From positions 124,001 to 188,000 of IMG/VR virus record IMGVR_UViG_3300046507_000773: a stretch of DNA of 64,000 nucleotides. One strand, given 5' to 3'. Position 1 is the first letter of the stretch; each line of letters begins with the position of its first letter. This document shows positions 37,381 to 52,809 of this stretch, in pieces. Position numbers and translations under genes: made by a program. The notes below the pieces were generated by a model that was not told the origin of the DNA, made no database searches, and saw only the letters and a list, made by a program, of their open reading frames with translations.

Positions 37381-39384
37381 ATGGCCGTACAAGGTAAAGA
37401 CGATCCGAAGAAGAACACCACTGGCTTCGGTTCCAACCAGCAGCAGCAAACCGCCATGGGCGCCAGCTTCGAGCGCGCTCGTGAAAACCAGCAACCCAAC
37501 CAGAACGAAAGCATGAACAACAACTTCGGCTCGAACACCACCGGCAACGACGACGGCATGTGGTCCTTCCTGAACCCGTCCGCAAACGGCCTGTACACCG
37601 TCACCGACACCGCCGCCGGCGAAGCCCTGTCCAAGCTGGACAAGGCCCTGGGCGAGATCTACAAGAGCGCCAACCCGGCGATCCAGATCACCACGCTGCC
37701 GCTGTCGATGGAAGCGAACCAGATGCTGAACATCGACACGCTGGTCGTCATCACCCGCCTGACCAACGTGCCGCAGGCCGGCATCGCCTACCACCCGATC
37801 CTGATCGCTTCCTCGATCCCGAAGATCGAAGACGCAGTCGTCCAGGTCAACGGCGTGAACACCAACGAAACCCGCGTCGAAGGCGACGTGGCTGACGACG
37901 TCTTCCACGAAGCCGTCTTCAACGAAGTGCGCCGCCTGTTCCCGAACGACCAGGTCACCATCACCCTGGGCGAAGTGCTGCCGCGCGTCTTCAACTTCGA
38001 CGACAAGGACGCCGTCCAGAAAGTCGCACGCAATGCCTCGATGGCCGGCGCCGTGACCCTGCAGAAACTGGTGCCGGGCTGGAGCGACCTGAACCTGGCG
38101 AACGTCAAGAAGGACTCGAGCCTGACCCTGCGCTCGAACTACGGCCAGCCGAACGAAAACAACCGCGTCGGCCTGCCGGTCCGCTCGGACGTCGTCGTGT
38201 CCCTGACCGCCGAGCCGCTGAACCAGAACCAAGGCCAGCAGCGCCGTTCGGTCGTGCAGACCCGTTCCCGCGAAGTCTCGCGTGTCCAGGCCTTCGTCGA
38301 TCTGGTCTGGGCGCCGACCACCGGTCCGCGCAATCCGTTCTTCAATGCGCAGATGAACCAGCAGCCGGCATTCGGCCAGCCGGTGCAGCAGACCAACCCG
38401 CACCAGCGTTACATCCCGCGCATCGTCGTGACCGGCCTGTCGACCCAGAACCCGCCGACCACCGCCATGCAGCTGCTGTCGGCCCTGCTGTCGTCGTACA
38501 TCAGCGAAGAAGGTCACTGGGTCCACGCGTTCCAGCCGCGTACCTACCGTTCGGGCTCGAAAGAGATCGACATGCACGACATCGGCGCGCTCGCTATCGA
38601 AGCCAACTTCGAGAACGATCCGTCCGGCCTGGGCCAGCGTGTGGACACCAGCCTGGAAACCTTCCAGCCGATGCTCGCCGATTACCTGGCGGCCATCATC
38701 CGTCCTGACCCGATCATCTCGGTCGACGTCGACGAATGCGGCCCGGACAGCTGGTACAACGGCTTCCTGCCGATGGCAGCTGAAGGTCAACAGGAAGCGC
38801 TGGACGAACTGTTCAACGCATGGAACATCCTGACCAACGGCCGCTTCGCCATCAACTGGGAAAAAGCGCAGTACAACGGCCAGATCTGCACCGACGAGAA
38901 CAACCGCATCCACCTGGGTTACTACCTGGACGCGGAAGGCAACCGTCGCGACCTGCGCGAAATCGACTACCTGGCTGTGCTGAACCGTTTCGGCGGCGGC
39001 ACCGACCACGACATCGTCAAGCGCTGGTCCGACTCGTTCATCGACGGTACCGATCCGCTGCTGAAGCGTCTGGAAAACCGCAAGAAGATCATCGACATGA
39101 TGACGCAGAACACCGCGGTGTACACGGGCTTCGCTCGTCGCATCTCCTTCGCGCACGTCCTGATGCAAGTCGGCGCCAAGTCGGCCAAGGAAGCCGGCCT
39201 GGACTTCCGTACCATCTCGAGCCACGCTCAGCTGAAGACCAACGAACGCGCCTCCGGCAACTTCGACAACCTGATGATGTCGGGCAGCCAGAGCTCGGGC
39301 CTGTTCGGCCGCACCTCGTTCGGTCAAGCGTCGAACAACTTCGGCTCGAACCGTTCGTTCGGCTTCTCGCGCAGCAGCTTCTAA
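37381..39384 (+). CDS. chmA: Chimallin, the major phage nuclear shell protein
   Basis: 667 aa with extreme codon bias, between the gp52-like gene and nvRNAP beta'. Disordered termini, and ENNRIHLGYYLDAEGNRRDLREIDYLAVLN matches the chimallin pattern. Confidence 0.9.
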   Translation: MAVQGKDDPKKNTTGFGSNQQQQTAMGASFERARENQQPNQNESMNNNFGSNTTGNDDGMWSFLNPSANGLYTVTDTAAGEALSKLDKALGEIYKSANPAIQITTLPLSMEANQMLNIDTLVVITRLTNVPQAGIAYHPILIASSIPKIEDAVVQVNGVNTNETRVEGDVADDVFHEAVFNEVRRLFPNDQVTITLGEVLPRVFNFDDKDAVQKVARNASMAGAVTLQKLVPGWSDLNLANVKKDSSLTLRSNYGQPNENNRVGLPVRSDVVVSLTAEPLNQNQGQQRRSVVQTRSREVSRVQAFVDLVWAPTTGPRNPFFNAQMNQQPAFGQPVQQTNPHQRYIPRIVVTGLSTQNPPTTAMQLLSALLSSYISEEGHWVHAFQPRTYRSGSKEIDMHDIGALAIEANFENDPSGLGQRVDTSLETFQPMLADYLAAIIRPDPIISVDVDECGPDSWYNGFLPMAAEGQQEALDELFNAWNILTNGRFAINWEKAQYNGQICTDENNRIHLGYYLDAEGNRRDLREIDYLAVLNRFGGGTDHDIVKRWSDSFIDGTDPLLKRLENRKKIIDMMTQNTAVYTGFARRISFAHVLMQVGAKSAKEAGLDFRTISSHAQLKTNERASGNFDNLMMSGSQSSGLFGRTSFGQASNNFGSNRSFGFSRSSF

Positions 39385-39414
39385 GCGGCGACGCCACTGA
39401 CGTGGTAACATGAA

Positions 39415-39446
39415 TAAGGGGGGCTTCGGCTCCCCTTATTTTTTTC
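39415..39446 (+). terminator. Intrinsic terminator of chmA
   Basis: AATAAGGGGGGC-TTCG-GCTCCCCTTATT followed by a T-run. Confidence 0.8.
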
Positions 39447-39472
39447 TGTGTTTTAAGTTCAAGGAGGATATC

Positions 39473-40954
39473 ATCGGTATCTCACTAGAACTTGTCAATT
39501 TCAATACTTTGTTTCGGCAAGGGTCTCGTAAAGAGAAGTTGATCATCAACGACTTCGACAATACGAGTACCGAGCAAAGGAAGATCTTCGACAAGATTAT
39601 CTATACCGAGTACGACAACGCTGACTTGCTGAGCAACCTGCCCACTTGCGAATGCGGTCACTTGTACGGACAGCACCTCGAACATGTAACGTGTACCGTG
39701 TGTAACTCCGAAGTTCTTGCGCCGCTCGAGCAAGACCTAGAGCCTGTTGTGTGGATGCGTTCACCCAACGGTGTTGCAGACCTGATTAACCCGAGTGCCT
39801 GGGCGATGATGTCCAAGCGCTTCGAACGACAAAGCTTTGACTTTGTACGCTTCTTCGCAGATCGCGATTATCGGCCGAATGTAAAAGATCCGGACGCGCT
39901 GCCTGAGGTACTGAGTTGGGGCATCCCGCGCGGGTACAACAGTTTCGTCGAAAACTTCGACATCCTGATGAACCTGTTCTTTGAATCGAAGCACTTCCGT
40001 CTGCGTAAAGGCGAACGGGACGATTTCCGAATCCTTCTTGAGAGGTATCGGGATTGCTTCTTCTGCGAGTTCTTGCCACTACCTAATCGCTCGGTCCTCG
40101 TGATCGAGAAGACGAACGTGGGCAAGTACGTGGATGATACGATTCCTGGTGTGATCGACGCAATCTACACCATGATCGGCATCGACGCACCGATGTCAGG
40201 CCACAGCGTCCGTGTTAAGGAAAACCGGACGATCAAGACCATCATCCAGCTCAACGACTTCAGCGAACAGACCATTCGGAAGAAGCTGGCAAAGAAACCT
40301 GGCGTGTTCCGCAAACACGTCTACGGTACCCGAACGCACTTTAGCTTCCGTGCGGTCATCTCGTCGAACACCAACGCGCACGACTACGACGAGTTGCACT
40401 TGCCTTGGGGCGTGGCTGTCAACCTGCTGAACTTGCACCTGCGTAATAAGCTGGACAAGATGGGTTACACGCCGAACGAAGCCCTGGCATTCCTGAACGA
40501 GTATTCGCTCAAGTACCATCCGGTGCTGGATGCTCTGTTCCAGGAACTGATCGCCGAAAGCCCGTACGTCGGTCTGCCAGTCGTGTTCCAGCGTAATCCG
40601 TCGCTGGAGCGTGGCTCGATTCAGTTCATGTTCGTGACCAAGGTTAAGCCCGATGCCGGTGTTACTACGGTTTCGCTCTCGATCTTGTCGGTGGTTGGCT
40701 TTAACGCTGACTTCGACGGCGACCAGCTGAACGGTACGCTGCTACTCGACAACTACACTGCGGAAGAAATGAAAGCTCTTGCCCCACACAAGAGCGTGTT
40801 CGACATGAACACTCCGCGTGCACCGTCGCGTAACTCGTCGATGCCGAAACCGGTTGTGGCCACCATCGCCCACTGGTATCATCTCGATGAGGACCACGTC
40901 TATGATCCGGAGAAGGCCCGGTTAATGGACGACATACCGACATTGTCGGATTAA
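39473..40954 (+). CDS. Non-virion RNA polymerase beta' N-terminal catalytic subunit (phiKZ gp55-56.1-like); probable ATC start
   Basis: Zn-finger CECG...CTVC, SFRAVIS, FQRNPSL and catalytic NADFDGD. AGGAGG at 39462-39467 lies 5 nt upstream of the in-frame ATC at 39473. Confidence 0.92.
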   Translation: MGISLELVNFNTLFRQGSRKEKLIINDFDNTSTEQRKIFDKIIYTEYDNADLLSNLPTCECGHLYGQHLEHVTCTVCNSEVLAPLEQDLEPVVWMRSPNGVADLINPSAWAMMSKRFERQSFDFVRFFADRDYRPNVKDPDALPEVLSWGIPRGYNSFVENFDILMNLFFESKHFRLRKGERDDFRILLERYRDCFFCEFLPLPNRSVLVIEKTNVGKYVDDTIPGVIDAIYTMIGIDAPMSGHSVRVKENRTIKTIIQLNDFSEQTIRKKLAKKPGVFRKHVYGTRTHFSFRAVISSNTNAHDYDELHLPWGVAVNLLNLHLRNKLDKMGYTPNEALAFLNEYSLKYHPVLDALFQELIAESPYVGLPVVFQRNPSLERGSIQFMFVTKVKPDAGVTTVSLSILSVVGFNADFDGDQLNGTLLLDNYTAEEMKALAPHKSVFDMNTPRAPSRNSSMPKPVVATIAHWYHLDEDHVYDPEKARLMDDIPTLSD

Positions 40955-40970
40955 AAGAAAAGGAGTTCGT

Positions 40971-41597
40971 ATGGCACGCTTTTTCGTCGGCAGCGCCGAT
41001 GAATTTGAAAGCCAAACATTTGCTCCACCGCACGCTGGTACGGTAGAGTACTTGCGCGGCCAAACGGAGCAAGCAGCACACGGATGGGGTGACAACATCA
41101 CTCCATTCGCCCAGATGTTCATGGAGCGCGCTCAGCAGACATTCGACAAGTTCTACAGTTCGGATGCGCTCGCGAAAGCTCGTGCCGCACTTCGTAAGAC
41201 CGCCAACCTCTTTAAGCGCGATATCATCGTGCCGATGGAGACCATGGAGGACTTTCAGAACGCTACGCCGCGAAACCAAAGAACCATCATGGCTTTTCCG
41301 CGTTTGCGTAAGCTGTATCAGGAACAGATGTGCGATGGCTTTGAAGGTCAGTACGTTGACCTTTATCCGGGAACCATTGGCGAAAGCCATCCGGATTATC
41401 GCCGCATCTATACTGGCGAAGTGAAAGAGGACGCCGACGGCGATATCATGGTAACCCACTATATCGGCGACGAAGAAGATCTTGAAACGTATCCGGCTGA
41501 TGAAATCCATATCGACCGGGCAAACCTCTCGATTCTCGATGTCCTCATGGACGTAAGCAACAAAGATCCGTCCAATTCCTCGGGCGGCTCGCTGTAA
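40971..41597 (+). CDS. Conserved protein at the phiKZ gp59 (Imp3) position
   Basis: AAGGAG RBS; 208 aa; synteny directly after nvRNAP beta'. Confidence 0.55.
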   Translation: MARFFVGSADEFESQTFAPPHAGTVEYLRGQTEQAAHGWGDNITPFAQMFMERAQQTFDKFYSSDALAKARAALRKTANLFKRDIIVPMETMEDFQNATPRNQRTIMAFPRLRKLYQEQMCDGFEGQYVDLYPGTIGESHPDYRRIYTGEVKEDADGDIMVTHYIGDEEDLETYPADEIHIDRANLSILDVLMDVSNKDPSNSSGGSL

Positions 41598-41707
41598 TGA
41601 AAGGCACTCCGCCCATTGGCGGGGTGCTTTTTTATCCCGGCTTTACTTTCTTTTCTTCTTTGCTTTGATGGTATGTTCAGTAAAATCCTACCAAAGTGAG
41701 GAATAGC

Positions 41708-42112
41708 ATGAGTGCTGTTGTCCCAACATTATCCCCAGTCGGCTGGGCACGAAGCCCGGAAGACAAAGCGTTCTTTTTGTTTTCGCATTTCTACGAGTCA
41801 GAGAAAAACCAAACGCGAGTCTACGGAAACAACGTTTCCAACTTGCAGTGGCTCAACGCCGAATACGGCACGGACATCCCTGAGTTCTGCGCACAATTGC
41901 GTAAGACTCTCACTGACTACCTGGGTCGTCATTTCGATAGCGTCAACGTTGACGTAACTAGCGATATGAACACCAACCCAGGGAGCCAGATCAACATCAA
42001 GGTTTCGTCCTCGGTCTTCGAGAACGGTATCAAGTATTCTTTTGGCCACCTCGTCCAACAGAACGGTAAAGTCGTAAAGCTTCTCACCCTCATTAACGGT
42101 AGTTATCAGTAA
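41708..42112 (+). CDS. Conserved core protein (phiKZ gp61-like position)
   Basis: GAGGA RBS; VVPTLSPVGW start; synteny. Confidence 0.6.
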   Translation: MSAVVPTLSPVGWARSPEDKAFFLFSHFYESEKNQTRVYGNNVSNLQWLNAEYGTDIPEFCAQLRKTLTDYLGRHFDSVNVDVTSDMNTNPGSQINIKVSSSVFENGIKYSFGHLVQQNGKVVKLLTLINGSYQ

Positions 42113-42123
42113 AAGGAAACACC

Positions 42124-42675
42124 ATGGCAGTTGACATCAAAAAGATCTTCGCCGACATCGAGCGCGCCACCGAAACCGAGACCCGCCGCATCTCGGAAGC
42201 TGCGTTCAAGACCATCTTTTTGCCGATGTTCCAGAACCAGGACAGCAATCCGCACGGCATGGTCCTGATGAAATGGGCGCAATACGTGGGCAGCATCTTC
42301 CACAAGGCCTACGTGGTCGACGAAAAGAACAACATCCTGTTCACGGTGCCGCCGGTCGTCAAACGCGACGCCATCGCTGAACTGGGCCGGACCGACGGTG
42401 ACGGTCGTCCGCTGCAAAACGTGGCGCACATGATCAATACCTACAACCAGATGACCAACATCGGGCCGATTCCTGCGGAAAATTATCTCAATGAACAATT
42501 AACCAGGCGCCTTTCTATTATGAAAGGCGACCAGAACTATCTGGACGACCTCACGGCCTGGAACGAAATCTTCAAACGCTACGGCGTGGCGCCGATCAAA
42601 GAGGTCGACGGCGTGACCACCAAAACCGACACGAAAGGTATCGCATCGCAACATGACGAAATCGAGCCGCTCTAA
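42124..42675 (+). CDS. Conserved core protein (phiKZ gp62-like position)
   Basis: AAGGA RBS; strong codon bias; LFTVPP motif. Confidence 0.6.
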   Translation: MAVDIKKIFADIERATETETRRISEAAFKTIFLPMFQNQDSNPHGMVLMKWAQYVGSIFHKAYVVDEKNNILFTVPPVVKRDAIAELGRTDGDGRPLQNVAHMINTYNQMTNIGPIPAENYLNEQLTRRLSIMKGDQNYLDDLTAWNEIFKRYGVAPIKEVDGVTTKTDTKGIASQHDEIEPL

Positions 42676-43780
42676 AGTAAAGGGCGCATCGTTAAGTGAT
42701 CTACACCTGTTACATCGACGTACTCCTACGTCACTCCTGATTAAGAATCTGTACACGTCCTTACCCGACAATCAGGAGACTGCCGACTTGGATATCATCT
42801 TCTTAGCCGGAGATGTGTTCGATGATCTGGCAACATTAGCAAACGAGAATCTGTGGGAAGTGAAGATCTGGATTGCGAACCTTCTGAGGATGTGCAAGAA
42901 ACATGGCATCATCTTGCGCGTCTTAGAAGGAACGCCCAGCCATGATTGGAAACAATCCTGGCTCTTCCCACTGATTAACGAGATAGCAGGCATTGGCGCC
43001 GACATCAAACACGTGAAAGAACTCTCCATCGAGTACATAGAGCCCATCGGTATATCCGTGCTCTATGTGCCCGATGAGTGGGGTCCTACCGACAAAACCT
43101 TAAGCCAAGTACAAGAACTGCTGCAAGCCAAAGGGCTTGATAAGGTAGATCTTGCTATCATGCATGGACAGTTCGCACATCAGTTACCATCCCATGTGAC
43201 GGCTCCCAAGCACGACGCTTCCGCGTATTTGGAACTGGTTCGCTTCTTTATCTTCATTGGCCATGTGCACACCTACAGCCGCTATGACCGCATCATCGCG
43301 CAAGGTAGTCACGACCGTAACGGTCATGGGGAAGAGGAAGCTAAGGGACACGTGAGGTTTGAGATTGATCTGGAAAGCGGAGAACACACCGTCCAGTTCG
43401 TCGAGAACAAGGGTGCTCAGCGTTACCTGACTATTCAGTGTAACGGGCTCGACTTAGAAGAAACGCTTAACGAAATCGGACGACAGATCAAGGACCTGCC
43501 TGACTTGTCGTTTGTGCGCATCGAAGCTGATTATACCAACCCCATCCTGGCTAACTTGGATGCCGTGGCTCGCCGCTGGCCCATGCTAACCTGGTCAAAA
43601 CTGGTACGAAAGGAAGAGAAGGAAGAAAAAGAAGAGTTAGAGAACGAAGAAGTACATTACACCCCGCTTACCATTACCCGCGAAAACGTTAGCGGGCTTC
43701 TCATGGACCGACTTGTACGAGCCGGTTTGCAAGGTAGCCAACTTGGTACGGCTGATCGACTCTTAGGAGGGTTGCTATGA
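42653..43780 (+). CDS. sbcD: SbcD/Mre11-like metallophosphoesterase nuclease (gp65-like)
   Basis: SDLH, AGDVFD, LEGTPSHD, MHG and GHVH motifs. Confidence 0.88.
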   Translation: MTKSSRSKVKGASLSDLHLLHRRTPTSLLIKNLYTSLPDNQETADLDIIFLAGDVFDDLATLANENLWEVKIWIANLLRMCKKHGIILRVLEGTPSHDWKQSWLFPLINEIAGIGADIKHVKELSIEYIEPIGISVLYVPDEWGPTDKTLSQVQELLQAKGLDKVDLAIMHGQFAHQLPSHVTAPKHDASAYLELVRFFIFIGHVHTYSRYDRIIAQGSHDRNGHGEEEAKGHVRFEIDLESGEHTVQFVENKGAQRYLTIQCNGLDLEETLNEIGRQIKDLPDLSFVRIEADYTNPILANLDAVARRWPMLTWSKLVRKEEKEEKEELENEEVHYTPLTITRENVSGLLMDRLVRAGLQGSQLGTADRLLGGLL

Positions 43781-44640
43781 ATCCGTATTTTGAAGGCATT
43801 GCGGCGCGTGCCGTTGGGGAATACGTTCCCATTTCGGTCGCGACCGCCATTGCAATTGAGAATGCTTGCGGTATCAATCCTGAGACCCGCTTGAAAAAGA
43901 ACCCCATCGAAGGTGTTGATCAGTTCCACGTCAACATCCGAACTCTCTTCCGTAACTTCATGGGCGCTTTGGATACGGCAACGCTACGTGGCGTGCCGCC
44001 CGTATTCATCGCACCTGTACTAATAGAAGAGATGGACTATATCGAAAGCATCATTCGAGACTATTCCAATGGGGGCGCTAAGGTCGTCTTTTACTTCAGC
44101 AACTATAAGAACCTGGAGTGGAAGTATCCGAAGGCTGTGATTCGCCGCGACAACACCGACAAGCAGAAAAGCTATCGGGCGACGATGAACGATACCATGG
44201 CTACCCTTTTCGACACCGTGCCTGAAAGGATTAAAGGCTATGATTTAAAGCTTGGCGATAAAGACACGCACTTGGCTCGAGCATTGATGTTGACGAATTA
44301 CGCATACGACTTGCTGTCGCATCGCGAGTTCCGAGACTTAAAGCTTATCGAATCCCACACGGGAGCGGTGAAAGAGCGAGCGCAGTGGTACACCAAGTAC
44401 CACAACGGGAAGGACTTAGCGATGATTCCTTTCCGTGAGGATCTTATTCAAGTGTTTGGGGACTCCGAGACATTCGTGCCAATGGACATTAAGCTCCGTA
44501 AGCTCATCATTGGGCTGGCCGAAAAGAATCGTTGGGGACCCTTGACGACGATGAGTAAGATCAGTGACAACTTGAAGCAGCTTGAGCAAACCAATGGCTT
44601 CGCTGCGGCAATTGTCAAGAGCCTTTTAGTTGGACCCTAG
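43777..44640 (+). CDS. Conserved core protein, possibly a 5'-3' (FEN/PIN-like) nuclease (gp66-like)
   Basis: FHVNIRTLFRN and QVFGDS segments; synteny. The functional call is weak. Confidence 0.5.
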   Translation: MNPYFEGIAARAVGEYVPISVATAIAIENACGINPETRLKKNPIEGVDQFHVNIRTLFRNFMGALDTATLRGVPPVFIAPVLIEEMDYIESIIRDYSNGGAKVVFYFSNYKNLEWKYPKAVIRRDNTDKQKSYRATMNDTMATLFDTVPERIKGYDLKLGDKDTHLARALMLTNYAYDLLSHREFRDLKLIESHTGAVKERAQWYTKYHNGKDLAMIPFREDLIQVFGDSETFVPMDIKLRKLIIGLAEKNRWGPLTTMSKISDNLKQLEQTNGFAAAIVKSLLVGP

Positions 44641-44735
44641 CAGCATCGGCCAGGTTAATTTTTACTGAATCTTGGTAAAATAAACGGGCCGCTTTAATAC
44701 AATGAGCCTAGTAATCTTACAACACGAGGACTAAC

Positions 44736-45503
44736 ATGAGTGACAACAATAACGGTGGTGGCAACGGTTTCGGCGCTCCGCCGCGCGTCAAGAACGCATT
44801 CGACATCACCAAGCTGAAGCTTACCGCCAAGGGTGCCGATGGCCAGAGCAAAGCCACGATCCAGCTGACCCTGCACCAGAACATGCCGCGCTTCGTCGTC
44901 TGGACCGGCAACGCCGCCGAACGCGAAGACCGCAACAAAGGCTACGGCAAGATCATCGCCGCTCTGGACCCGGTCGTCCTCGCCGGTTTCTGGGGCATCC
45001 TGGACGAAGTGATCGACCATCAAGGCAAGACCAAGATGGCTGTGCAGAACAAGGGCCACAAGTTCTTCGGCGGCCAGCGCTCCGAGCGTCCGGAAGTGCT
45101 GAACACCCTGATCGTCGGCAAAGACGAAGACGGCGTCATCTGGATGATGGTTTCCGAAAAGGGCCGCGACCAGATCCGCTTCGAGTTCCGCTTCCCGGAA
45201 TACCACGTCATGATGAATGGCGACGGCACCCCGGTCGACAGCGCAACCGAATGCCGCATGGTGGCCAAGGGCTACCGTGAACTCATGAGCCGCCTGATGG
45301 TGACCATGATGGCCGACAACTACGTCGAACCGCCTCCGTTCGAGAAGAAGGGTGGCGGCGGTGGCAACCGTGGTAACTGGAACGGTGGCAACCGCGGCGG
45401 CAATGGCGGTAACGGTGGTGGCAACCGCGGCAACTACGGCGGCGGTAACGGCGGTGGCAATTCCGGCGGTGGCGGTGGCATGGACGACGACATCCCGTTC
45501 TAA
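44736..45503 (+). CDS. chmC: ChmC-like nucleus-associated nucleic-acid-binding protein (phiKZ gp67/Imp6 position) with a Gly/Asn tail ending DDDIPF
   Basis: Beta-rich ~200-aa domain plus a (GGN)n low-complexity tail; lies directly upstream of the gp68-like gene. Confidence 0.7.
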   Translation: MSDNNNGGGNGFGAPPRVKNAFDITKLKLTAKGADGQSKATIQLTLHQNMPRFVVWTGNAAEREDRNKGYGKIIAALDPVVLAGFWGILDEVIDHQGKTKMAVQNKGHKFFGGQRSERPEVLNTLIVGKDEDGVIWMMVSEKGRDQIRFEFRFPEYHVMMNGDGTPVDSATECRMVAKGYRELMSRLMVTMMADNYVEPPPFEKKGGGGGNRGNWNGGNRGGNGGNGGGNRGNYGGGNGGGNSGGGGGMDDDIPF

Positions 45504-45595
45504 GCCTTCACCTTCTAAGTAAAGTAAGCCCAACTGTCCTTTGCGGGGCGGTTGGGCTTTTTTTGGTAGTACAATTCAAGTACGGGATGAAAAAC

Positions 45596-45622
45596 ATTTC
45601 AATCACATATCACGTATTTGAA
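45596..45622 (+). promoter_or_regulatory. Putative early promoter
   Basis: ATTTCAATC-ACATATCAC-GTAT-TTG, core at 45605-45613. Confidence 0.6.
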
Positions 45623-45656
45623 TTGTAAGCCAGATTCATTTATAAGGAGAAGAAGC

Positions 45657-47198
45657 TTGAAGCTTGCAGAGCCGGATGATCTCCTAAGTGAGAAGTCCAC
45701 CGTGATCCTGTCGCACGGTAACGAACAAATCAGCTGGAACATTTCCATGCTGGCTCGCACGCGGAATGAAGAGAACCTCGACCGTTTCAAGGAATTAAAC
45801 GGATACTGGGCTCGCCTGCCGGAAAAACGTCAGGACGAGATCTTCAAGGTGTACACCGATATCAAGGACGTACTCCATTCCTCGAGCGATCAAAACGCGG
45901 TAGCCTTGCGACTGCAGCCGCTAGTTGCAAAGCTGTTTAAGCTTAACCCGATGGACGAGATGGCAACGTATCTCGCCATCTACGAGGATCTCAAGATCCC
46001 CTCGAATATCCACGAACACTACGACAGTAGCGGGGATTCGAGAAATAGCGAACAAGGTACTTACGTTACTAAGCAGTACCGTGACCTTGTTACCATGTCG
46101 GTAACGCTGCGCATCATGGTCCCAGTCTGGGGCGACTACATCGCAATTACTGAGCGTCTCGCGGGGACGACGTTCAAGGAATTCATCGCGATGCAGCTGT
46201 TGGCGCATGCGGCTATCTACAATTCGGACACGATGAACCGGCTGCGCGAATACATCCAAGCGCGTCTGCCACCGGAAACTCCGAAAGAAGTTATCTTCCA
46301 GGGCATCAGCTCGGAAGACTTCCCGGATTGGATTCTGGCCCGAATCCTCACACGTCGTCTGGTTGTTGCCGACTTGCGCGGTAACGACGTGAAGAAGTCC
46401 TTGATGCCTTTCCTGCATAGCTTCATCGAAGGCATGGTGAACCCGAAGCGTAACAACTTCACCAGCATGATCAAGGAAAAGACCTTGGAAGCCGGCGGGT
46501 CCACGGAAGACAGCAACCTCTCCATCTTGGAGGGTTACCGTCCCCGAGCCGAGCTTACCGCAGGCAACATCGCGCACATGGCAACTTACACCCGCAATGC
46601 AGAGCGGATGGCCAAGCGCATCTGTCCCGATCTTCCCGAGGAATTACTGGCATACAGTCTGCGCTCTTCAAAAGCGCTGTTGACGCAGATGATCATGCCA
46701 GTCCAACTCTCGCTTGCATCGTGGATACTTCGTCCGGTTCTTCCGGTACGCGCCTTGCCGTACTTCCGTAAAGTCGACGTGGTTCGCTGCATCGCTGTAG
46801 CTCAAGCGCTGCTGTGGCACCGTGGGCATTACGAACTGGCAGGTCTGGTGAGTGGTGTCGCCCAGCAAAACCAAGGCGTACATCATCAACGCTCAACAGG
46901 CTCTCGTGGTCGCATCCCGACGGAACTGATCGACGAGATCCACCGGCTTTATCCGTACTCGGAAAAGCCAACAGGCAAAATCCGGGAAGGCCAGGATACC
47001 CGTGAACTCAACATGGTAGTACAATCAATCAAGGAGATCGACGGCCTCTTTACGAAATTCGAGTGGACTCTCACCCTGCCGCCAGAGTGGGTCGAGAAGC
47101 TCACCAAAAACAAGAACAACCGCAACTATTCCGTACCCCACGAAATGCGGGTCAGGTTAGCAAGCCTGATCGCTGCAATAGCAAAAAGGAGCTTTTAA
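45657..47198 (+). CDS. nvRNAP promoter-specificity subunit (phiKZ gp68-like); TTG start
   Basis: About 513 aa, helical; AAGGAG 7 nt before TTG 45657; synteny between ChmC and PicA. Confidence 0.75.
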   Translation: MKLAEPDDLLSEKSTVILSHGNEQISWNISMLARTRNEENLDRFKELNGYWARLPEKRQDEIFKVYTDIKDVLHSSSDQNAVALRLQPLVAKLFKLNPMDEMATYLAIYEDLKIPSNIHEHYDSSGDSRNSEQGTYVTKQYRDLVTMSVTLRIMVPVWGDYIAITERLAGTTFKEFIAMQLLAHAAIYNSDTMNRLREYIQARLPPETPKEVIFQGISSEDFPDWILARILTRRLVVADLRGNDVKKSLMPFLHSFIEGMVNPKRNNFTSMIKEKTLEAGGSTEDSNLSILEGYRPRAELTAGNIAHMATYTRNAERMAKRICPDLPEELLAYSLRSSKALLTQMIMPVQLSLASWILRPVLPVRALPYFRKVDVVRCIAVAQALLWHRGHYELAGLVSGVAQQNQGVHHQRSTGSRGRIPTELIDEIHRLYPYSEKPTGKIREGQDTRELNMVVQSIKEIDGLFTKFEWTLTLPPEWVEKLTKNKNNRNYSVPHEMRVRLASLIAAIAKRSF

Positions 47199-48683
47199 AT
47201 GTTTCAAGCATCGAACATCCGCGTCGCCCGTTTCCTGATTTACGAAACCCTCGGCTACGACAACATGTACCGCCGCGCATACAAGACCACGGCTGATGGC
47301 GTTGCCTTCGATACCCTGGCTGAGCGCATCTCGGCCCATGACCGTATTACGACCGACACTGTCGTCGGCCTGACCAACGGCTTCCTGGCACCGGACATCA
47401 ATACCGAATCGCCCAATCCGATCTTCATCCCGGACGGCTGGGGCGCCAAGCGTTGCCGCTTCTTGCTGGAACTGGAATACGACTTCGGCGGCCTCGGCTC
47501 GAAGATCCGTGAAGCCTTCATGGGCTGGACCGATCACTACGGTTTGTCGCTGCAAAGCCAAGCGATCGACCGCGACATGGTGTTCCACCTGAACTCGGTG
47601 TCGCACATGAAGATCCAGGAAATCCCGACGCTCAACGGCATCGAGAAGCACTACAGCGTCCTGGACACGTCGCACATCCTCGCAGCCCAGCAACATCACG
47701 GCCAAAGCGGCGCCTTCAATAACGAGAAGCTGTTCCGCATGCGTCCGGACGATCTGTTCGCCACGATGCAGCTGTCGCACCTGGACACTGGCGGCACCTA
47801 CGACGACCGTACCCGGATCGGCACTGGCGCCCAAAAGGCATCGCGCTCGTCGAACATCACGACGAACTACATGACGAAGATCCTGGACTCGTACCTGACG
47901 GCCGCCCGCACCCAGGGTGACCTCGGCCAAGACGCCCCGGACATCCTGGAATCGGCACGCAACCGTTCGTACCAGACCAGCTCGGCTTCGTCCGATCCAT
48001 TCCTGCGCGAGATCTCCCGCCTGGAAAACGGTGGCAACTACATCCAGGACCACTTCACGTACGCGACGCTCTTGTCGATCGATCCGAACGCTGACAACAT
48101 GGCCGAAGTGCAGGTGCTGCCGACCATGATGCGTGACAGCTGGGCAGGCAACACCTCGGAAGAAACCTGGGGTGGCCGCGACATCTACGCACAGTTCGCC
48201 ACCATCCTGGCCCAGTCGGTCCCGTCGATCCTGATGGAAACCGGCCTGCAAGCGGTGAAGTTCCAGTCGACGAATCGCAAGATCGGCATGCAGATCGAAA
48301 CCACCATCCAGGGCATCAAGTCCTTCAGCGAAGTGTTCTCCCTGGCGCAACAGGGCAACACTTTCATCGAGCGGGTCAACCGCGAGATCATGCTGGACCT
48401 GTCCTTCAACGGACAGATGGACTACGGCCTCATCATGGAAATGTCGATCCACGGTGAATGCATCGTCGAGCTTTCGCTGAATGGCGACAACAACCTGCAC
48501 CGGTTCGTTGCTCCGCTGTTTGCCGATGCGTTCTTCAGCCCGATCGTCACCAGCGATCAACAGCGCAGCCACATGAACGCGGAACACTTCGGTCAATTGG
48601 CCGGACGTCTCGCAGAAGTCAATCTCCTGGGCAGCGCTACGAGCACCAACATCCAGGTCGGCGCCGGCGGCATGGCGTTCTAA
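47199..48683 (+). CDS. picA: PicA/Imp1 phage-nucleus protein importer (phiKZ gp69-like)
   Basis: 494 aa, immediately after the gp68-like gene and two genes before nvRNAP beta. The call rests on synteny and size. Confidence 0.7.
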   Translation: MFQASNIRVARFLIYETLGYDNMYRRAYKTTADGVAFDTLAERISAHDRITTDTVVGLTNGFLAPDINTESPNPIFIPDGWGAKRCRFLLELEYDFGGLGSKIREAFMGWTDHYGLSLQSQAIDRDMVFHLNSVSHMKIQEIPTLNGIEKHYSVLDTSHILAAQQHHGQSGAFNNEKLFRMRPDDLFATMQLSHLDTGGTYDDRTRIGTGAQKASRSSNITTNYMTKILDSYLTAARTQGDLGQDAPDILESARNRSYQTSSASSDPFLREISRLENGGNYIQDHFTYATLLSIDPNADNMAEVQVLPTMMRDSWAGNTSEETWGGRDIYAQFATILAQSVPSILMETGLQAVKFQSTNRKIGMQIETTIQGIKSFSEVFSLAQQGNTFIERVNREIMLDLSFNGQMDYGLIMEMSIHGECIVELSLNGDNNLHRFVAPLFADAFFSPIVTSDQQRSHMNAEHFGQLAGRLAEVNLLGSATSTNIQVGAGGMAF

Positions 48684-48728
48684 ATAACAAAGGGGGTAGC
48701 CGCAACTACCCCCAACAAGGAGTAATGC

Positions 48729-50036
48729 ATGAAGTTGCTTGAACTGTACAACACCATAGCCGACACGGCTAACTGGGTGGTGTCTCCGGAAGGATTCATC
48801 TCCCAGAAAACCATCGGCTCCAATAAGGTCGAACCGCTGCTCGTCAAGAAGCTGCGTCTCGCCATGCCGACCGATGAAATCCTTAAGAGCCGCGAGATGC
48901 GCGATGTGATGGTCTTCCATCCGCTCAAGGAAGACGTGCTGAAGCCCGAGACCGACGTGTTGGACGCATTGCGTACTTCGCTGAACTCGCGCCTGAACGT
49001 TACGACCTGCTGGGTGGCTCTGTCGCTGCTCATCATCGCAGGTTCTTCGGAAGATCATGCCAAGCTCGATCCGGACCAGAGCGAATTCCTGTCGCATGTG
49101 AAAGCTGCGAACCAGGATTGCGTGGACGACCTGAAGCGCATCTTCGATTCCATGAAGCTCAACGCCAAGGACAAGACCGCGGTGAAGATCTTCACGAAGA
49201 AGGGCGGCAGCATGGGCGGCCAGAAGTACACCTGCCTCGGTGTGGTCAAGTTCCCGCTGTACCAGGAACTGCTCGATTCCGTCGAGAACACCCCGAAGTC
49301 CGGCAAGCCTGAAGTCTTCGGCATCAAGCTCTCGAGCAAGAAAAGCCGGGATGCCCTGATCGCCCTGTTCCGCTACATCTTCCCGAAGATCGACACGCCG
49401 GAAGTGTACCAGTACGGCAGCAGCAGCCTCGTGGCAGCTTTCCTCGATGCGCTGCTGCAAACCACCGCGAAGATCGCGGCACCGATCAATACCGTGATCG
49501 ACACCTTCTCGACGATCTTCACCGATCCCGATGAGATGCGCATTCCGGGCGATTGGCTGCCAGTCTTCATGGACCTGGGCACGATGGTCAACGAGATCCG
49601 CATGGTCCCGCAGCAAACGGCCAATGCCCTCGAAATGCCGGACGACGTGAAAGCCAAGCATGCGGTGGACGGCACCAAAGCAGCACCGGCAACGCAGGCC
49701 CCGAGCTCGGGCGCCTACGTGACGCCAGTGGCTGACACGGGACCGGCCAAGACCGAGCGTGGTCTGGACTTCGCCAAACTCGTCAAGGGTGGCGCACAGC
49801 CCCAGAAACCGGCGTTCGGCTTCGGCCAACCGCAACAACAAAGCCAGTTCGGCGGCAACAACACTCACCCGGCGTTTGCAGCGCTGCGTGGTGGTCAGAC
49901 GCAGAACGCCAACAATCCGTTCGCACAGTTCCAAACCGGAAATGCGCAAGCTGGTCGTTCGGGCTTCGGCTTTGGTGGTAGCGGCGGCAACAGTGGCGGC
50001 GGCTTCGGCTTCGGCGGAAGTGGTCGCGGCTTCTAA
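48729..50036 (+). CDS. Conserved core protein (phiKZ gp70-like) with an FG-repeat C-terminal tail
   Basis: AAGGAG RBS; FHPLKEDV N-terminal motif; 7 FG dipeptides in the last ~75 aa. Confidence 0.75.
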   Translation: MKLLELYNTIADTANWVVSPEGFISQKTIGSNKVEPLLVKKLRLAMPTDEILKSREMRDVMVFHPLKEDVLKPETDVLDALRTSLNSRLNVTTCWVALSLLIIAGSSEDHAKLDPDQSEFLSHVKAANQDCVDDLKRIFDSMKLNAKDKTAVKIFTKKGGSMGGQKYTCLGVVKFPLYQELLDSVENTPKSGKPEVFGIKLSSKKSRDALIALFRYIFPKIDTPEVYQYGSSSLVAAFLDALLQTTAKIAAPINTVIDTFSTIFTDPDEMRIPGDWLPVFMDLGTMVNEIRMVPQQTANALEMPDDVKAKHAVDGTKAAPATQAPSSGAYVTPVADTGPAKTERGLDFAKLVKGGAQPQKPAFGFGQPQQQSQFGGNNTHPAFAALRGGQTQNANNPFAQFQTGNAQAGRSGFGFGGSGGNSGGGFGFGGSGRGF

Positions 50037-50040
50037 GTTG

Positions 50041-50096
50041 CCGGCATAAGCGGCATAAAAGAACCATCCCCGTGTTTGGAGATGGTTCTTTTTTTG
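50041..50096. terminator. Bidirectional terminator preceded by two CGGCATAA copies
   Basis: AAAAGAACCATC...GATGGTTCTTTT stem between convergent genes. Confidence 0.75.
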
Positions 50097-50113
50097 TTTG
50101 TTTAGAAGTTGTG

Positions 50114-50449
50114 TTACGCGCGCTTTTTGGTCCGATAAGCCTGAAGGCGTTTGCTCACCACGGTTGCATCTGGCACCAGGATGACCTCCAGATCCTTGAA
50201 GGAATCAGTGGGACTGGTCAATCCCGCCAAGCGCATGGTGATGTAGTGCAGCTCACCGGAGATTTTCATCTTCGTGAGCATTCCGTAGAAATCAAACTCG
50301 AAGACTTCCTTGTCGATGGACTGAACAGCCATCGGTGCAGTCTGCGGGTGATTCCTAAAGTACGTAAGGTGGTCTTCTAATACAGTACGAAACCCTGCAT
50401 CGTAATAAGAGAGATCAACCTTACTGATCATCAAATCTTCAATAGCCAT
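50114..50449 (-). CDS. Small conserved protein with a LysM/T4-gp53-like pattern
   Basis: DFYGML...ELHYITMRLAGLTSPTD...ILVP. Weak pattern only. Confidence 0.5.
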   Translation of the reverse strand: MAIEDLMISKVDLSYYDAGFRTVLEDHLTYFRNHPQTAPMAVQSIDKEVFEFDFYGMLTKMKISGELHYITMRLAGLTSPTDSFKDLEVILVPDATVVSKRLQAYRTKKRA

Positions 50450-50467
50450 TGGAAAATCCTTAAATTA

Positions 50468-50494
50468 TTTTCACTCACATATTACTAAAGTGTA
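50468..50494 (+). promoter_or_regulatory. Putative early promoter
   Basis: TTTTCACTC-ACATATTAC-TAAA-GTG, core at 50477-50485. Confidence 0.65.
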
Positions 50495-50561
50495 CCAAGT
50501 ATAAGAGTACACAGCTTTAAACTGGTTTTCGTATTAGAAACAAGAAAAAGGAATCTTTGTG

Positions 50562-52763: not shown

Positions 52764-52809
52764 CAATGTCCGGCCCTCTTCGTGGGGGCTGGACTGAAAG
52801 GATAAAAAG

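What the first reader, a model, noticed from the sequence alone, without database searches (positions are those of the whole stretch)
37381..50036. FG-repeat tails on chimallin and on the PicA-adjacent gp70-like protein: a possible nuclear-pore-like selective barrier for the phage nucleus
Seen: the last ~75 aa of 48729..50036 (PAFGFGQPQQQSQFGGNN...SGFGFGGSGGNSGGGFGFGGSGRGF) carry 7 FG dipeptides in a G/S/N/Q-rich, nearly uncharged background. Chimallin ends in SSGLFGRTSFGQASNNFGSNRSFGFSRSSF (4 FG in 30 aa, one of them GLFG) and has FGSN twice more in its Q/N-rich N-terminal arm. Established: FG/GLFG repeats with polar spacers form the permeability barrier of eukaryotic nuclear pores; PicA/Imp1 is the selective importer of phage nuclei; ChmC has a G/N tail and forms condensates. 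Inference: this one block may encode the shell, the importer, an FG nucleoporin-like protein and an RNA-binding condensate protein, that is, a convergent NPC-like gate. Alternative: chimallin C-terminal aromatics are known to dock into neighbouring protomers, which could explain the chimallin FGs but not the gp70 tail.
Basis: partly seen in the sequence, partly recalled or inferred. Interest (0 to 1): 0.8.

Follow-up and report, generated by a model that had tools for sequence, protein, structure and literature searches.

The report
FG-rich disordered tail on phage-nucleus gp70
A core protein of nucleus-forming phages (the phiKZ gp70 / PhiPA3 gp64 family, seen at the nuclear shell in PhiPA3) carries in this phage a disordered, nearly uncharged tail with seven conserved FG pairs that looks like a small nuclear-pore FG domain, but the FG flavour is confined to one small clade, and the FGs on the shell protein chimallin are ordinary docking motifs.

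Summary
The gp70-like protein (48729-50036) has 7 FG in its last 75 residues, in a G/Q/N-rich stretch with no acidic residues. AlphaFold2 models this stretch as disordered. ChmA (37381-39384) has 4 FG in its last 30 residues and 2 in its N-tail.

In ChmA the C-terminal phenylalanines sit at positions conserved across 120 homologs (motifs G-L-F-N-R-G, N-R-x-F-G, R-W end). These positions align with the known lattice-docking segments CTS1 and CTS2.

In gp70 the FG tail is conserved in its own clade: 8 of 8 members, F 86% identical against 46% for other residues, dN/dS 0.19. FG is absent from phiKZ, PhiPA3 and Goslar, and from about half of 150 wider homologs, whose tails use Y, W or M instead.

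What the family conserves is a low-charge, low-complexity tail of about 150 residues. It has hydrophobic "stickers" next to glycine, a T-x-x-G-L-D-F motif and a hydrophobic last residue. I read it as a multivalent tether or cohesive module at the shell. An NPC-like barrier stays possible but untested (about 0.12).

The parts
37381..39384 (+). Chimallin (ChmA), major nuclear shell protein, 667 aa
   Evidence: Pfam PF25677 E 4e-32; PHROG 4795 'nuclear shell protein' E 2e-73; PDB chimallin/PhuN hits 7sqt and 8fne; AlphaFold2 core residues 75-615 modelled with high confidence.
37381..37554 (+). ChmA N-tail (residues 1-58), Q/N-rich, with FGSN at residues 16-19 (37426-37437) and 49-52 (37525-37536)
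   Evidence: pLDDT below 50. It corresponds to the 201phi2-1 N-tail (residues 1-47), which is dispensable for assembly (PMC9365700). FG occurs here only in the window's clade: 7 in 332 aa, against 0.08 per 100 aa elsewhere.
37555..37596 (+). ChmA NTS-like docking segment (residues 59-72, G-M-W-S-F-L-N-P...)
   Evidence: Aligns with the 201phi2-1 NTS (residues 48-61) and with the conserved [FW]-S-F-[RL]-x motif of homologs.
39241..39381 (+). ChmA C-terminal docking tail (residues 621-667, CTS1/CTS2-like) carrying the 4 FG
   Evidence: Positional conservation in 120 homologs: R623 95%, F628 aromatic 68%, F642 aromatic 94%, F660 aromatic 76%, R664 85%, last residue aromatic 96%. Aligned to 201phi2-1 CTS1 590-611 and CTS2 622-631.
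44736..45503 (+). ChmC/Imp6-like RNA-binding protein, 255 aa. G/N-rich tail at residues 206-248 (45351-45479) and an acidic tip DDDIPF at residues 250-255 (45483-45500)
   Evidence: PHROG 3284 E 1e-43; BLASTP to PhiPA3 gp61 3e-7 and FLC9 gp375 2e-32; tail described for ChmC in PMC11077065.
45618..47198 (+). gp68-like non-virion RNA polymerase subunit. The start may be 45654, going by the 514-aa ortholog in L007
   Evidence: PDB 7ogp chain PHIKZ068 E 8e-44; PHROG 3209.
47199..48683 (+). PicA/Imp1-like nuclear import protein, 494 aa
   Evidence: PHROG 3141 E 8e-72; BLASTP to phiKZ gp69 3e-30 and PhiPA3 gp63 2e-31; tblastn hits.
48729..49628 (+). gp70/gp64-like protein, folded N-terminal domain (residues 1-300)
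   Evidence: PHROG 3520 E 5e-60; tblastn to PHIKZ070; AlphaFold2 pLDDT above 90. No PDB fold match, chimallin included; only jumbo-phage homologs in BFVD.
49629..49793 (+). gp70-like linker (residues 301-355) containing the family-wide motif T-E-R-G-L-D-F (residues 342-348, 49752-49772)
   Evidence: pLDDT 51-63 with a short predicted helix at 348-354. Motif consensus [VI]-V-[RKH]-T-x-[RN]-G-[LVI]-D-F-x-S across homologs.
49794..50033 (+). gp70-like FG-rich low-complexity tail (residues 356-435), 7 FG, ending G-R-G-F
   Evidence: pLDDT 39-48; dN/dS 0.19 against L007; F residues 86% conserved in an 8-member clade against 46% for other residues.

Best explanation
48729-50036 encodes the ortholog of phiKZ gp70 / PhiPA3 gp64, a chimallivirus-specific protein. 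It has a 300-residue folded domain of unknown fold and a roughly 135-residue disordered, low-charge, low-complexity C-terminal tail. The tail follows a sticker-and-spacer design: hydrophobic residues, mostly next to glycine, are scattered in a P/Q/G/N/A background. Conserved short motifs are embedded in it (T-x-x-G-L-D-F, then NPALA or HPAFAAL) and the last residue is hydrophobic, often after G-R. In this phage's clade the stickers are phenylalanines in FG/GF context, which gives a stretch that resembles a cohesive FG-nucleoporin domain in composition. In other clades the same tail uses Y, W or M. I infer that the tail makes many weak contacts, and a few specific motif contacts, that hold the folded domain at the nuclear shell and among the other shell-associated proteins (ChmA, ChmB, ChmC/Imp6, PicA). 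This parallels the published finding that ChmC needs its own low-complexity tail for shell localisation. The FG dipeptides at the end of ChmA are a different thing: they belong to positionally conserved segments that dock into neighbouring protomers of the lattice. Shown here: gene identities, disorder, conservation patterns and selection. Taken from the literature: shell localisation of gp64. Inferred: what the tail binds and what it does.
For: Disorder: pLDDT above 90 for residues 1-300 and below 55 beyond. Family-wide tail: median 149 aa, 67% Q/N/S/T/G/P/A, 8% charged, 12.5% F+Y+W+M. Aromatic-glycine adjacency is 800 observed against 359 expected (z = 24), and FG is 132 against 64 (z = 8.8) in 150 homologs chosen by the folded domain alone. 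The last residue is hydrophobic in 85%, and R lies at positions -4 to -2 in 45% against 10% expected. Conserved T-x-x-G-L-D-F motif. Clade conservation: 5-8 FG in 8 of 8 members at 50-100% domain identity; F 86% against 46% for other residues, Mann-Whitney P = 2e-4. dN/dS of the tail is 0.19 at dS 0.78. Sticker identity is labile: 58 changes on the tree against 63-71 for shuffled labels, and FG-rich tails arose about 5 times. Examples are W-rich FLC9 and M-rich phiKZ and PhiPA3. Literature: gp64 localises to the shell and co-purifies with ChmB (PMC10643120). Deleting the ChmC tail abolishes shell localisation and condensates (PMC11077065). ChmA: anchor positions conserved in 120 homologs and aligned to CTS1/CTS2.
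Against: No interaction or localisation was measured for this protein. The Bondy-Denomy preprint lists phiKZ gp70 among nuclear proteins rather than shell proteins, and found no binding to Imp1 in E. coli co-expression. Two antisense oligomers against PHIKZ070 have a blank effect column in the supplement (PMC12571901). Against that, phiKZ Tn-seq shows only 1 insertion site in 1302 bp (PMC12676376), so the importance of the gene is unsettled and polar effects on the downstream RNA polymerase genes are possible. Pairing of ChmA and gp70 tail chemistry across 10 loci gives only a weak hint of co-variation. Within the clade the tail is conserved nearly as well as the folded domain, which would also fit specific folding-upon-binding rather than fuzzy cohesion.
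Confidence: 0.5

Rival explanations
1. Copies of gp70 anchored around transport sites in the ChmA lattice project cohesive FG tails (Y, W or M tails in other clades). These form a sieve-like phase that excludes inert proteins and lets PicA-licensed cargo, or mRNA with ChmC, pass. It would be convergent with FG nucleoporins and the PEX13 YG phase.
For: The tail has 8.75 FG per 100 aa, 24% N+Q, 27% G and 5% charged residues, and is disordered. This is in the range I recall for cohesive GLFG-type Nup domains (own knowledge). The language-model neighbours are Nucleoporin_FG, Nup42 and Nup98 clusters. gp64 is at the shell. The gene sits next to PicA and near ChmC. F residues are selectively conserved. 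In this clade FG also appears in the ChmA N-tail, which is dispensable for assembly in 201phi2-1. The PicA paper itself cites the peroxisomal YG phase as a precedent.
Against: The stretch is only 80 residues with 7 FG per chain. FG is absent in the experimentally studied phages and in half the family. There is no Pfam Nucleoporin_FG match even at E up to 10, and the atlas scores are within the range that shuffled proteins reach. gp70 does not bind Imp1 in pull-downs. There was no phenotype with two antisense oligomers. PicA forms puncta at the shell rather than acting as a known shuttling receptor. Nothing is known about oligomeric state or pore association.
Confidence: 0.12
2. A nuclear transcription or RNA-handling factor. 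gp70 acts inside the nucleus, or at its inner face, with the non-virion RNA polymerase and ChmC. Its low-complexity tail recruits or concentrates polymerase and nascent RNA, like activation domains, FUS-type or RGG-type tails.
For: The gene is embedded between nvRNAP subunit genes: gp68 upstream and the beta/beta' genes downstream, in the window and in all relatives. phiKZ gp70 is listed as a nuclear protein. Some homolog tails end in RGG-like runs such as G-R-G-R-G-F and N-F-G-R-G-G-G repeats. ChmC, two genes upstream, forms RNA condensates through its tail.
Against: The window's tail has only 3 R and one RGG in its last 80 residues and no acidic residues. gp70 is not among the subunits named for the nvRNAP complex (gp68, gp71-73, gp74) in the preprint read. 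PhiPA3 gp64 was scored as shell-localised, not diffusely nuclear. No nucleic-acid-binding fold was detected.
Confidence: 0.13
3. A specific C-terminal anchor that mimics chimallin's own tail. The G-R-x-hydrophobic end of gp70 (and the F-G-x-[ILV] end of PicA) inserts into the pocket on ChmA that normally receives CTS2 of a neighbouring ChmA. The rest of the tail is mainly a flexible leash.
For: ChmA ends in R-(x)-W/F (R664 85%, aromatic last residue 96%). The gp70 family ends in a hydrophobic residue in 85%, with nearby R enriched 4.5-fold. PicA homologs end hydrophobic in 34 of 34 loci, often as F-G-x-I/L/V. One ChmA homolog ends F-G-F-G-R-I, like many gp70 ends.
Against: The preferred last residue differs: W in ChmA, I/V/L in gp70 and PicA. 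Several unrelated proteins of the block also end hydrophobic. The loci are phylogenetically clustered.
Confidence: 0.15
4. A largely neutral low-complexity spacer whose composition drifts. On this view FG richness here is a by-product of lineage-specific composition.
For: Sticker identity changes almost as often as random labels on the tree (58 against 63-71). Tail length ranges from 98 to 270 aa, and FG-rich states are sporadic.
Against: dN/dS is 0.19 in the tail. All 12 tail F residues (residues 301-435) are identical in the 88%-identical relative. F is the best conserved residue type across the clade. A tail of 98 residues or more follows the domain in all 150 best representatives, out of 1484 with E up to 0.001. 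Strong aromatic-glycine adjacency (z = 24).
Confidence: 0.08

Closest known systems
FG nucleoporins of the cohesive GLFG/PSFG type (Pfam Nucleoporin_FG PF13634; Nup98/Nup100/Nup116, Nup42)
   Same: A disordered stretch with FG about every 11 residues and spacers rich in N/Q/G/S with almost no charge. It is attached to a folded anchoring domain, on a protein whose homolog sits at the boundary of a nucleus-like compartment.
   Different: No homology and no HMM match. It has 80 residues and 7 FG, against hundreds of residues and tens of FG (own knowledge). There are many FGFG/GFG doublets in a very G-rich context. The FG character is not conserved among orthologs. No known transport receptor binds it, and no pore scaffold is known.
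PEX13 YG domain of the peroxisomal import pore, and prion-like aromatic sticker-spacer domains (FUS, hnRNPA1)
   Same: Aromatic residues next to glycine in a polar, low-charge disordered domain. Across the gp70 family Y is as common a sticker as M and more common than F.
   Different: The gp70 tails are P/Q/A-rich, often Met-rich, and carry conserved linear motifs. Self-association is untested. The comparison rests on composition and on my knowledge of those systems.
ChmC/Imp6 N/G-rich C-terminal tail (PhiPA3 gp61, PMC11077065)
   Same: Same gene block, same shell association, and a disordered low-complexity C-terminal tail. For ChmC the tail is shown to drive condensates and shell localisation.
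   Different: The ChmC tail is a G/N/R/Y repeat followed by an acidic tip. The gp70 tail is uncharged, longer, has hydrophobic stickers and has no acidic tip.
Chimallin NTS/CTS1/CTS2 docking segments (201phi2-1 gp105, Goslar gp189; PMC9365700)
   Same: The window's ChmA tail aligns with them and keeps the conserved anchor residues. This accounts for the four C-terminal FG of ChmA.
   Different: The window's clade has about 9 more residues than 201phi2-1. It has G instead of the usual N after the G-L-F anchor (this makes the single 'GLFG') and ends in F rather than W. Its N-tail has clade-specific FG.
phiKZ gp70 / PhiPA3 gp64 / Goslar gp173 family (PHROG 3520)
   Same: Orthologous folded domain, same position after PicA, same domain-plus-disordered-tail architecture.
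   Different: Those tails have no FG and are Met/Gln/Pro-rich. The window's clade is the FG-rich variant.

Membership tests
FG nucleoporin (Nucleoporin_FG repeat domain) | Multiple FG dipeptides in an intrinsically disordered region | tested here: met
   7 FG in 80 residues; pLDDT 39-48.
FG nucleoporin (Nucleoporin_FG repeat domain) | Polar, low-charge spacers (N/Q/S/T/G) between the FG | tested here: met
   24% N+Q, 27% G, 10% S+T, 5% charged, no D/E.
FG nucleoporin (Nucleoporin_FG repeat domain) | Match to the family profile (Pfam PF13634 or relatives) | tested here: not met
   No Pfam hit for the tail at E up to 10 or for the whole protein. The feature-based neighbours are Nup clusters, but at scores of 0.75 or less, which the tool rates as a lead only.
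FG nucleoporin (Nucleoporin_FG repeat domain) | Long repeat domain with tens of FG | tested here: not met
   80 residues and 7 FG. The comparator lengths are from my own knowledge.
FG nucleoporin (Nucleoporin_FG repeat domain) | FG character conserved among orthologs | tested here: not met
   Kept in 8 of 8 members of the immediate clade. But 73 of 150 wider homologs have 0 FG, with a median of 1, and phiKZ, PhiPA3 and Goslar have 0.
FG nucleoporin (Nucleoporin_FG repeat domain) | Lines a transport channel, forms a selective barrier and is bound by transport receptors | not testable with these tools
   Needs localisation, in vitro phase and import/exclusion assays. Published pull-downs show no gp70-Imp1 binding in phiKZ.
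phiKZ gp70 / PhiPA3 gp64 family (PHROG 3520) | Profile and pairwise similarity of the N-terminal domain | tested here: met
   PHROG 3520 E 5e-60; BLASTP to gp64 3e-33, gp70 3e-26 and FLC9 gp372 4e-59; 1484 representatives at E up to 0.001.
phiKZ gp70 / PhiPA3 gp64 family (PHROG 3520) | Position directly downstream of PicA/Imp1 within the nvRNAP block | tested here: met
phiKZ gp70 / PhiPA3 gp64 family (PHROG 3520) | Localisation at the nuclear shell during infection | not testable with these tools
   Shown for PhiPA3 gp64 only (PMC10643120).
Chimallin (ChmA) | Pfam Chimallin_Phikzvirus profile and similarity to solved chimallins | tested here: met
   PF25677 at 111 bits against a cutoff of 27; PDB 7sqt and 8fne.
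Chimallin (ChmA) | Flexible N- and C-terminal segments with conserved anchor residues that dock on neighbouring protomers | tested here: met
   Anchor positions are conserved and align with NTS, CTS1 and CTS2 of 201phi2-1. The docking itself was not tested; the AlphaFold2 monomer leaves the tails unmodelled.
ChmC/Imp6 | Homology to PhiPA3 gp61 and an N/G-rich disordered C-terminal tail with an acidic end | tested here: met
   PHROG 3284 E 1e-43; BLASTP 3e-7; tail seen.
PicA/Imp1 | Homology to phiKZ gp69 / PhiPA3 gp63 over nearly full length | tested here: met
   PHROG 3141 E 8e-72; BLASTP 3e-30 and 2e-31.
RGG/GAR box RNA-binding tail | Several closely spaced RGG/RG repeats | tested here: not met
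   3 R and a single RGG in the last 80 residues. Some homologs do have such runs.
Aromatic sticker-spacer (prion-like) low-complexity domain | Disordered, low-charge, polar background with dispersed aromatic residues that are conserved in number rather than in identity | tested here: met
   Phase separation itself is not testable here.

The most novel reading that the evidence does not exclude
The gp70/gp64 family supplies a cohesive low-complexity phase at the transport sites of the phage nucleus. The stickers are F-G in this clade and Y, W or M elsewhere. Together with ChmC tails, and in this clade the FG-bearing N-tails of ChmA, it would act as a selective filter through which PicA-licensed cargo or mRNA passes. 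That would be a bacterial-virus analogue of the FG-nucleoporin barrier and the PEX13 YG phase, evolved independently.
Probability: 0.12. Interest if true: 0.9.

Novelty: new variant of a known kind. Interest (0 to 1): 0.55.

Why it matters
How proteins and mRNA cross the protein shell of the phage nucleus is an open question. PicA/Imp1 gives selectivity, but no channel or gate has been identified. gp70/gp64 is a core gene next to PicA whose function is unknown.

This work shows three things:
- The whole family carries a constrained sticker-and-spacer disordered tail.
- One clade has turned that tail into an FG-nucleoporin-like sequence.
- The F residues are what selection keeps.

This gives a concrete, cheap set of experiments: tail deletion, F-to-S and F-to-Y swaps, in vitro phase behaviour and partitioning of cargo. 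The chimallin FGs need no new explanation.

I found no paper that mentions FG repeats, nucleoporin-like sequences or disorder for gp64/gp70.

Tried and rejected
- Near-identical phage genomes: megablast found none. The nearest cultured relative is Burkholderia phage FLC9, at about 32-35% protein identity.
- Fold assignment for the gp70 domain: Foldseek against PDB gave nothing below E 0.6, so the domain is not chimallin-like. PDB sequence search gave nothing. BFVD gave only uncharacterised jumbo-phage homologs.
- Pfam on the isolated tails of gp70, ChmA and ChmC: no hit.
- DNA tandem duplication as the origin of the FG repeats: not seen.
- The search for related loci with the 92-sequence alignment failed for lack of a conserved stretch. 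A closer 18-sequence alignment worked.
- Co-variation between the aromatic type of the ChmA tail and that of the gp70 tail: only 10 usable pairs from few clades. F-only pairs with F-only, and W-ended ChmA pairs with W-rich gp70, but this is too few independent events to count.
- AlphaFold2 monomer of ChmA, to see whether the tail docks back on its own core: the tails came out unmodelled (pLDDT below 50), so the result is uninformative.
- The two N-terminal FGSN as the NTS docking element: rejected. The NTS aligns with residues 59-72, and the FGSN lie in the dispensable N-tail.
- RGG-box reading of the window's tail: too few arginines.
- Essentiality from the literature is contradictory: blank in the antisense screen and almost no transposon insertions. 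PCH45 Tn-seq supplements are not held.
- Complex prediction (gp70 tail with ChmA, PicA or ChmC) cannot be run with the tools given.

Full report
WHAT IS IN THE WINDOW. The region 37381-54963 is the conserved chimallivirus block on the + strand. Its genes are:
- ChmA, 37381-39384 (Pfam PF25677 and PHROG 'nuclear shell protein'; PDB chimallin hits).
- An RNA polymerase subunit gene and five small conserved genes.
- A ChmC/Imp6-like protein, 44736-45503.
- The nvRNAP subunit gp68, 45618-47198 (PDB 7ogp PHIKZ068, E 8e-44).
- PicA/Imp1, 47199-48683.
- The gp70-like protein, 48729-50036.
- The nvRNAP beta and beta' genes.

Pairwise BLASTP to phiKZ gp68-70, PhiPA3 gp61-64 and the fully syntenic Burkholderia phage FLC9 confirms each assignment. 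No phage record is close at the DNA level. The window is part of IMG/VR contig IMGVR_UViG_3300046507_000773, 226,810 bp.

THE OBSERVATION. It is correct as written. The gp70-like protein has FG at residues 363, 365, 374, 413, 415, 426 and 428. Its last 80 residues hold 11 F, 22 G, 19 N+Q, 4 K+R and no D/E. Against shuffles of the same residues, 7 FG against 3.0 expected gives P = 0.008, and FG plus GF gives P = 0.001. ChmA has 4 FG in its last 30 residues (P = 0.003) and FGSN at 16-19 and 49-52. No other 80-residue stretch in any of the six frames has more than 3 FG. There is no DNA tandem repeat behind the tail.

THE gp70 PROTEIN. AlphaFold2 with a 92-sequence alignment gives a confident domain for residues 1-300 (pLDDT above 90). 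Beyond that the chain is unstructured (pLDDT 39-63), apart from a short helix at 348-354. The domain has no relative in the PDB, chimallin included. In BFVD it matches only other jumbo-phage proteins.

THE gp70 FAMILY. I searched 1.84 billion representatives with the folded domain alone, so that tails could not bias the choice. This gave 1484 hits at E up to 0.001. All of the best 150 have a tail of 98-270 residues (median 149) after the domain.
- The pooled tail composition is P 16%, Q 15%, A 11%, G 10%, with only 8% charged residues and 12.5% F+Y+W+M.
- Aromatic residues sit next to glycine far more often than composition predicts: 800 against 359, z = 24. FG alone is 132 against 64, z = 8.8.
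- Embedded in the tails is a conserved motif, [VI]-V-[RKH]-T-x-[RN]-G-[LVI]-D-F-x-S-..-N-P-A-L-A, about 80 residues from the end.
- The last residue is hydrophobic in 85%, and arginine just before it is enriched 4.5-fold.

IS THE FG CHARACTER CONSERVED? Only locally. Among the 150 representatives, 73 tails have no FG and the median is 1. The window and its closest representative are the two richest.
- phiKZ gp70, PhiPA3 gp64 and Goslar gp173 have no FG in the tail. The two Pseudomonas phage tails are Met/Gln/Pro-rich. FLC9 gp372 has 8 tryptophans, mostly as WG.
- The 34 IMG/VR loci show the same spread of W-rich, Y-rich and M-rich tails.
- On a tree of the folded domain the dominant sticker changes 58 times, against 63-71 for shuffled labels. 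Tails with 4 or more FG arose about five times.

Within the window's own clade the tail is constrained. The clade has 8 proteins at 50-100% domain identity, and every member has 5-8 FG and 12-14 F with no W.
- F is the best conserved residue type: 86% against 46% for the rest, P = 2e-4.
- Against the 88%-identical relative L007 the tail has dN/dS 0.19 at dS 0.78, and all F residues are identical.

So selection keeps the phenylalanines in this lineage. Across the family it keeps a hydrophobic-sticker, polar-spacer design rather than FG as such.

CHIMALLIN. The C-terminal FGs have a known explanation. In 120 homologs chosen by the core, the tail has fixed anchor positions:
- R623: 95%.
- F628: aromatic in 68%.
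- F642: aromatic in 94%.
- F660: aromatic in 76%.
- R664: 85%.
- Last residue: aromatic in 96%.

The consensus motifs are E-R-A-x-G-x-F, G-L-F-N-R-G, N-R-x-F-G and R-W at the end. The window's single GLFG is the G-L-F anchor with G in place of the usual N. These segments align with CTS1 (590-611) and CTS2 (622-631) of 201phi2-1 chimallin. Those segments dock on neighbouring protomers and are required for self-assembly (PMC9365700).

FG density in ChmA C-tails is eight times that of the core, but only mildly above composition (z = 4.6), as expected from motif positions.

The N-terminal FGSN are not the NTS. The NTS aligns with residues 59-72, and the FGSN lie in the N-tail, which is dispensable for assembly in 201phi2-1. 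FG in that N-tail is found only in the window's clade: 7 in 332 residues, against 0.08 per 100 elsewhere. This is the one feature of ChmA that the docking explanation does not cover, but it rests on a single lineage. An AlphaFold2 monomer leaves both tails unmodelled, which decides nothing.

LITERATURE.
- PhiPA3 gp64 was among six proteins that clearly localised to the nuclear shell, and it co-purified with GFP-ChmB (PMC10643120).
- Deleting the low-complexity tail of ChmC abolishes condensates and shell localisation (PMC11077065).
- The Imp1 preprint lists phiKZ gp70 among nuclear proteins and found that it does not pull down with Imp1, whereas gp67/Imp6 does.
- Two antisense oligomers against PHIKZ070 have no effect recorded (PMC12571901, supplement).
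- phiKZ Tn-seq has one insertion site in the gene, like its essential neighbours (PMC12676376, supplement).
- No paper combines chimallin with FG repeats. Neither of the two reviews I searched mentions gp64, gp70 or nucleoporins; one has no mention of 'nuclear pore' at all and the other only speaks of 'ChmA nuclear pores' for mRNA export.

COMPARISON WITH FG NUCLEOPORINS. The tail resembles a cohesive FG domain in FG spacing, spacer chemistry, lack of charge and disorder. A protein-language-model search puts Nucleoporin_FG, Nup42 and Nup98 clusters among its nearest neighbours, at scores (0.75 or less) that the tool itself says are only leads. It fails the profile test. It is short. Its FG character is not conserved among orthologs. 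It is therefore not a member of that family. Whether it works like one cannot be decided here.

VERDICT.
- Best reading (0.5): a sticker-and-spacer disordered tail with embedded docking motifs holds gp70 at the shell and among the shell-associated proteins. FG is this clade's version of the sticker, and the chimallin FGs are lattice-docking anchors.
- NPC-like selective phase: about 0.12.
- C-terminal mimic of chimallin's CTS2: 0.15.
- Nuclear transcription or RNA role: 0.13.
- Neutral spacer: 0.08.

The tail of this family has not been described in the papers I could search, so I rate it a new variant of a known kind, namely low-complexity tails on phage-nucleus shell proteins.

Noticed in passing
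window 45483-45500 (ChmC/Imp6-like protein, residues 250-255); also L006-L041: The ChmC-like protein ends in M-DDDIPF, letter for letter the conserved C-terminal hexapeptide of E. coli SSB (PMC5872125). ChmC homologs end in an acidic run followed by [ILVM]-P-[FWY] in 27 of 37 loci. A nucleic-acid-binding tetramer core, a G/N-rich linker and an acidic-hydrophobic tip make up the SSB architecture. The ChmC paper describes the end as an S/D/E 'electronegative cluster' and does not mention SSB. The tip could recruit SSB-binding host or phage proteins, or be the Imp1-binding element.
   Followed up: partly
window 48660-48680 (PicA end); PicA homologs in L009-L041: PicA/Imp1 homologs end with a hydrophobic residue in 34 of 34 loci, often as F-G-x-[ILV] (for example GFGVI, LFGNV, KFGVI, QFGQL). 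The window's PicA ends G-G-M-A-F. gp70 and ChmA also end G/R-x-hydrophobic, which suggests a shared C-terminal anchor for shell proteins.
   Followed up: partly
window 37426-37437 and 37525-37536 (ChmA N-tail): FG or GF in the ChmA N-tail occurs in all seven close relatives (P0151-P0157) but almost nowhere else in the family. This is the same clade in which gp70 has the FG tail. It is one lineage only, so co-evolution cannot be claimed.
   Followed up: partly
window 50114-50449 (- strand): A small 111-aa ORF on the opposite strand lies between gp70 and the RNA polymerase beta gene. An ORF is kept at the same place in L007, FLC9 (gp371) and Goslar (gp172). Function unknown.
   Followed up: no
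window 37381-50036 compared with L007: Against the close relative L007, the shell and transport genes diverge more than the polymerase genes. Protein identity is 87% for gp70, 86.5% for ChmC and 89% for PicA, against 94-96% for the four RNA polymerase genes compared (gp68 included). dN/dS is 0.13-0.23 against 0.06-0.09. ChmA, by contrast, is 95-97% identical to its ortholog P0151 on the same contig.
   Followed up: no
window 47157-49949 (- strand): A 930-aa open frame runs antisense to PicA and gp70. It has biased, repeat-like composition, lies opposite two conserved coding genes, and is most likely a by-product of G+C-rich coding sequence.
   Followed up: no
L003, L004 (phiKZ gp70 and PhiPA3 gp64 tails): The tails of the two model Pseudomonas phage proteins are strikingly methionine-rich (runs such as P-M-M, M-M-Q, G-M-M). 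Met is a dominant sticker in 60 of 151 family tails, as often as Tyr. Met-rich low-complexity domains are rare and could be redox-sensitive. Not examined further.
   Followed up: no
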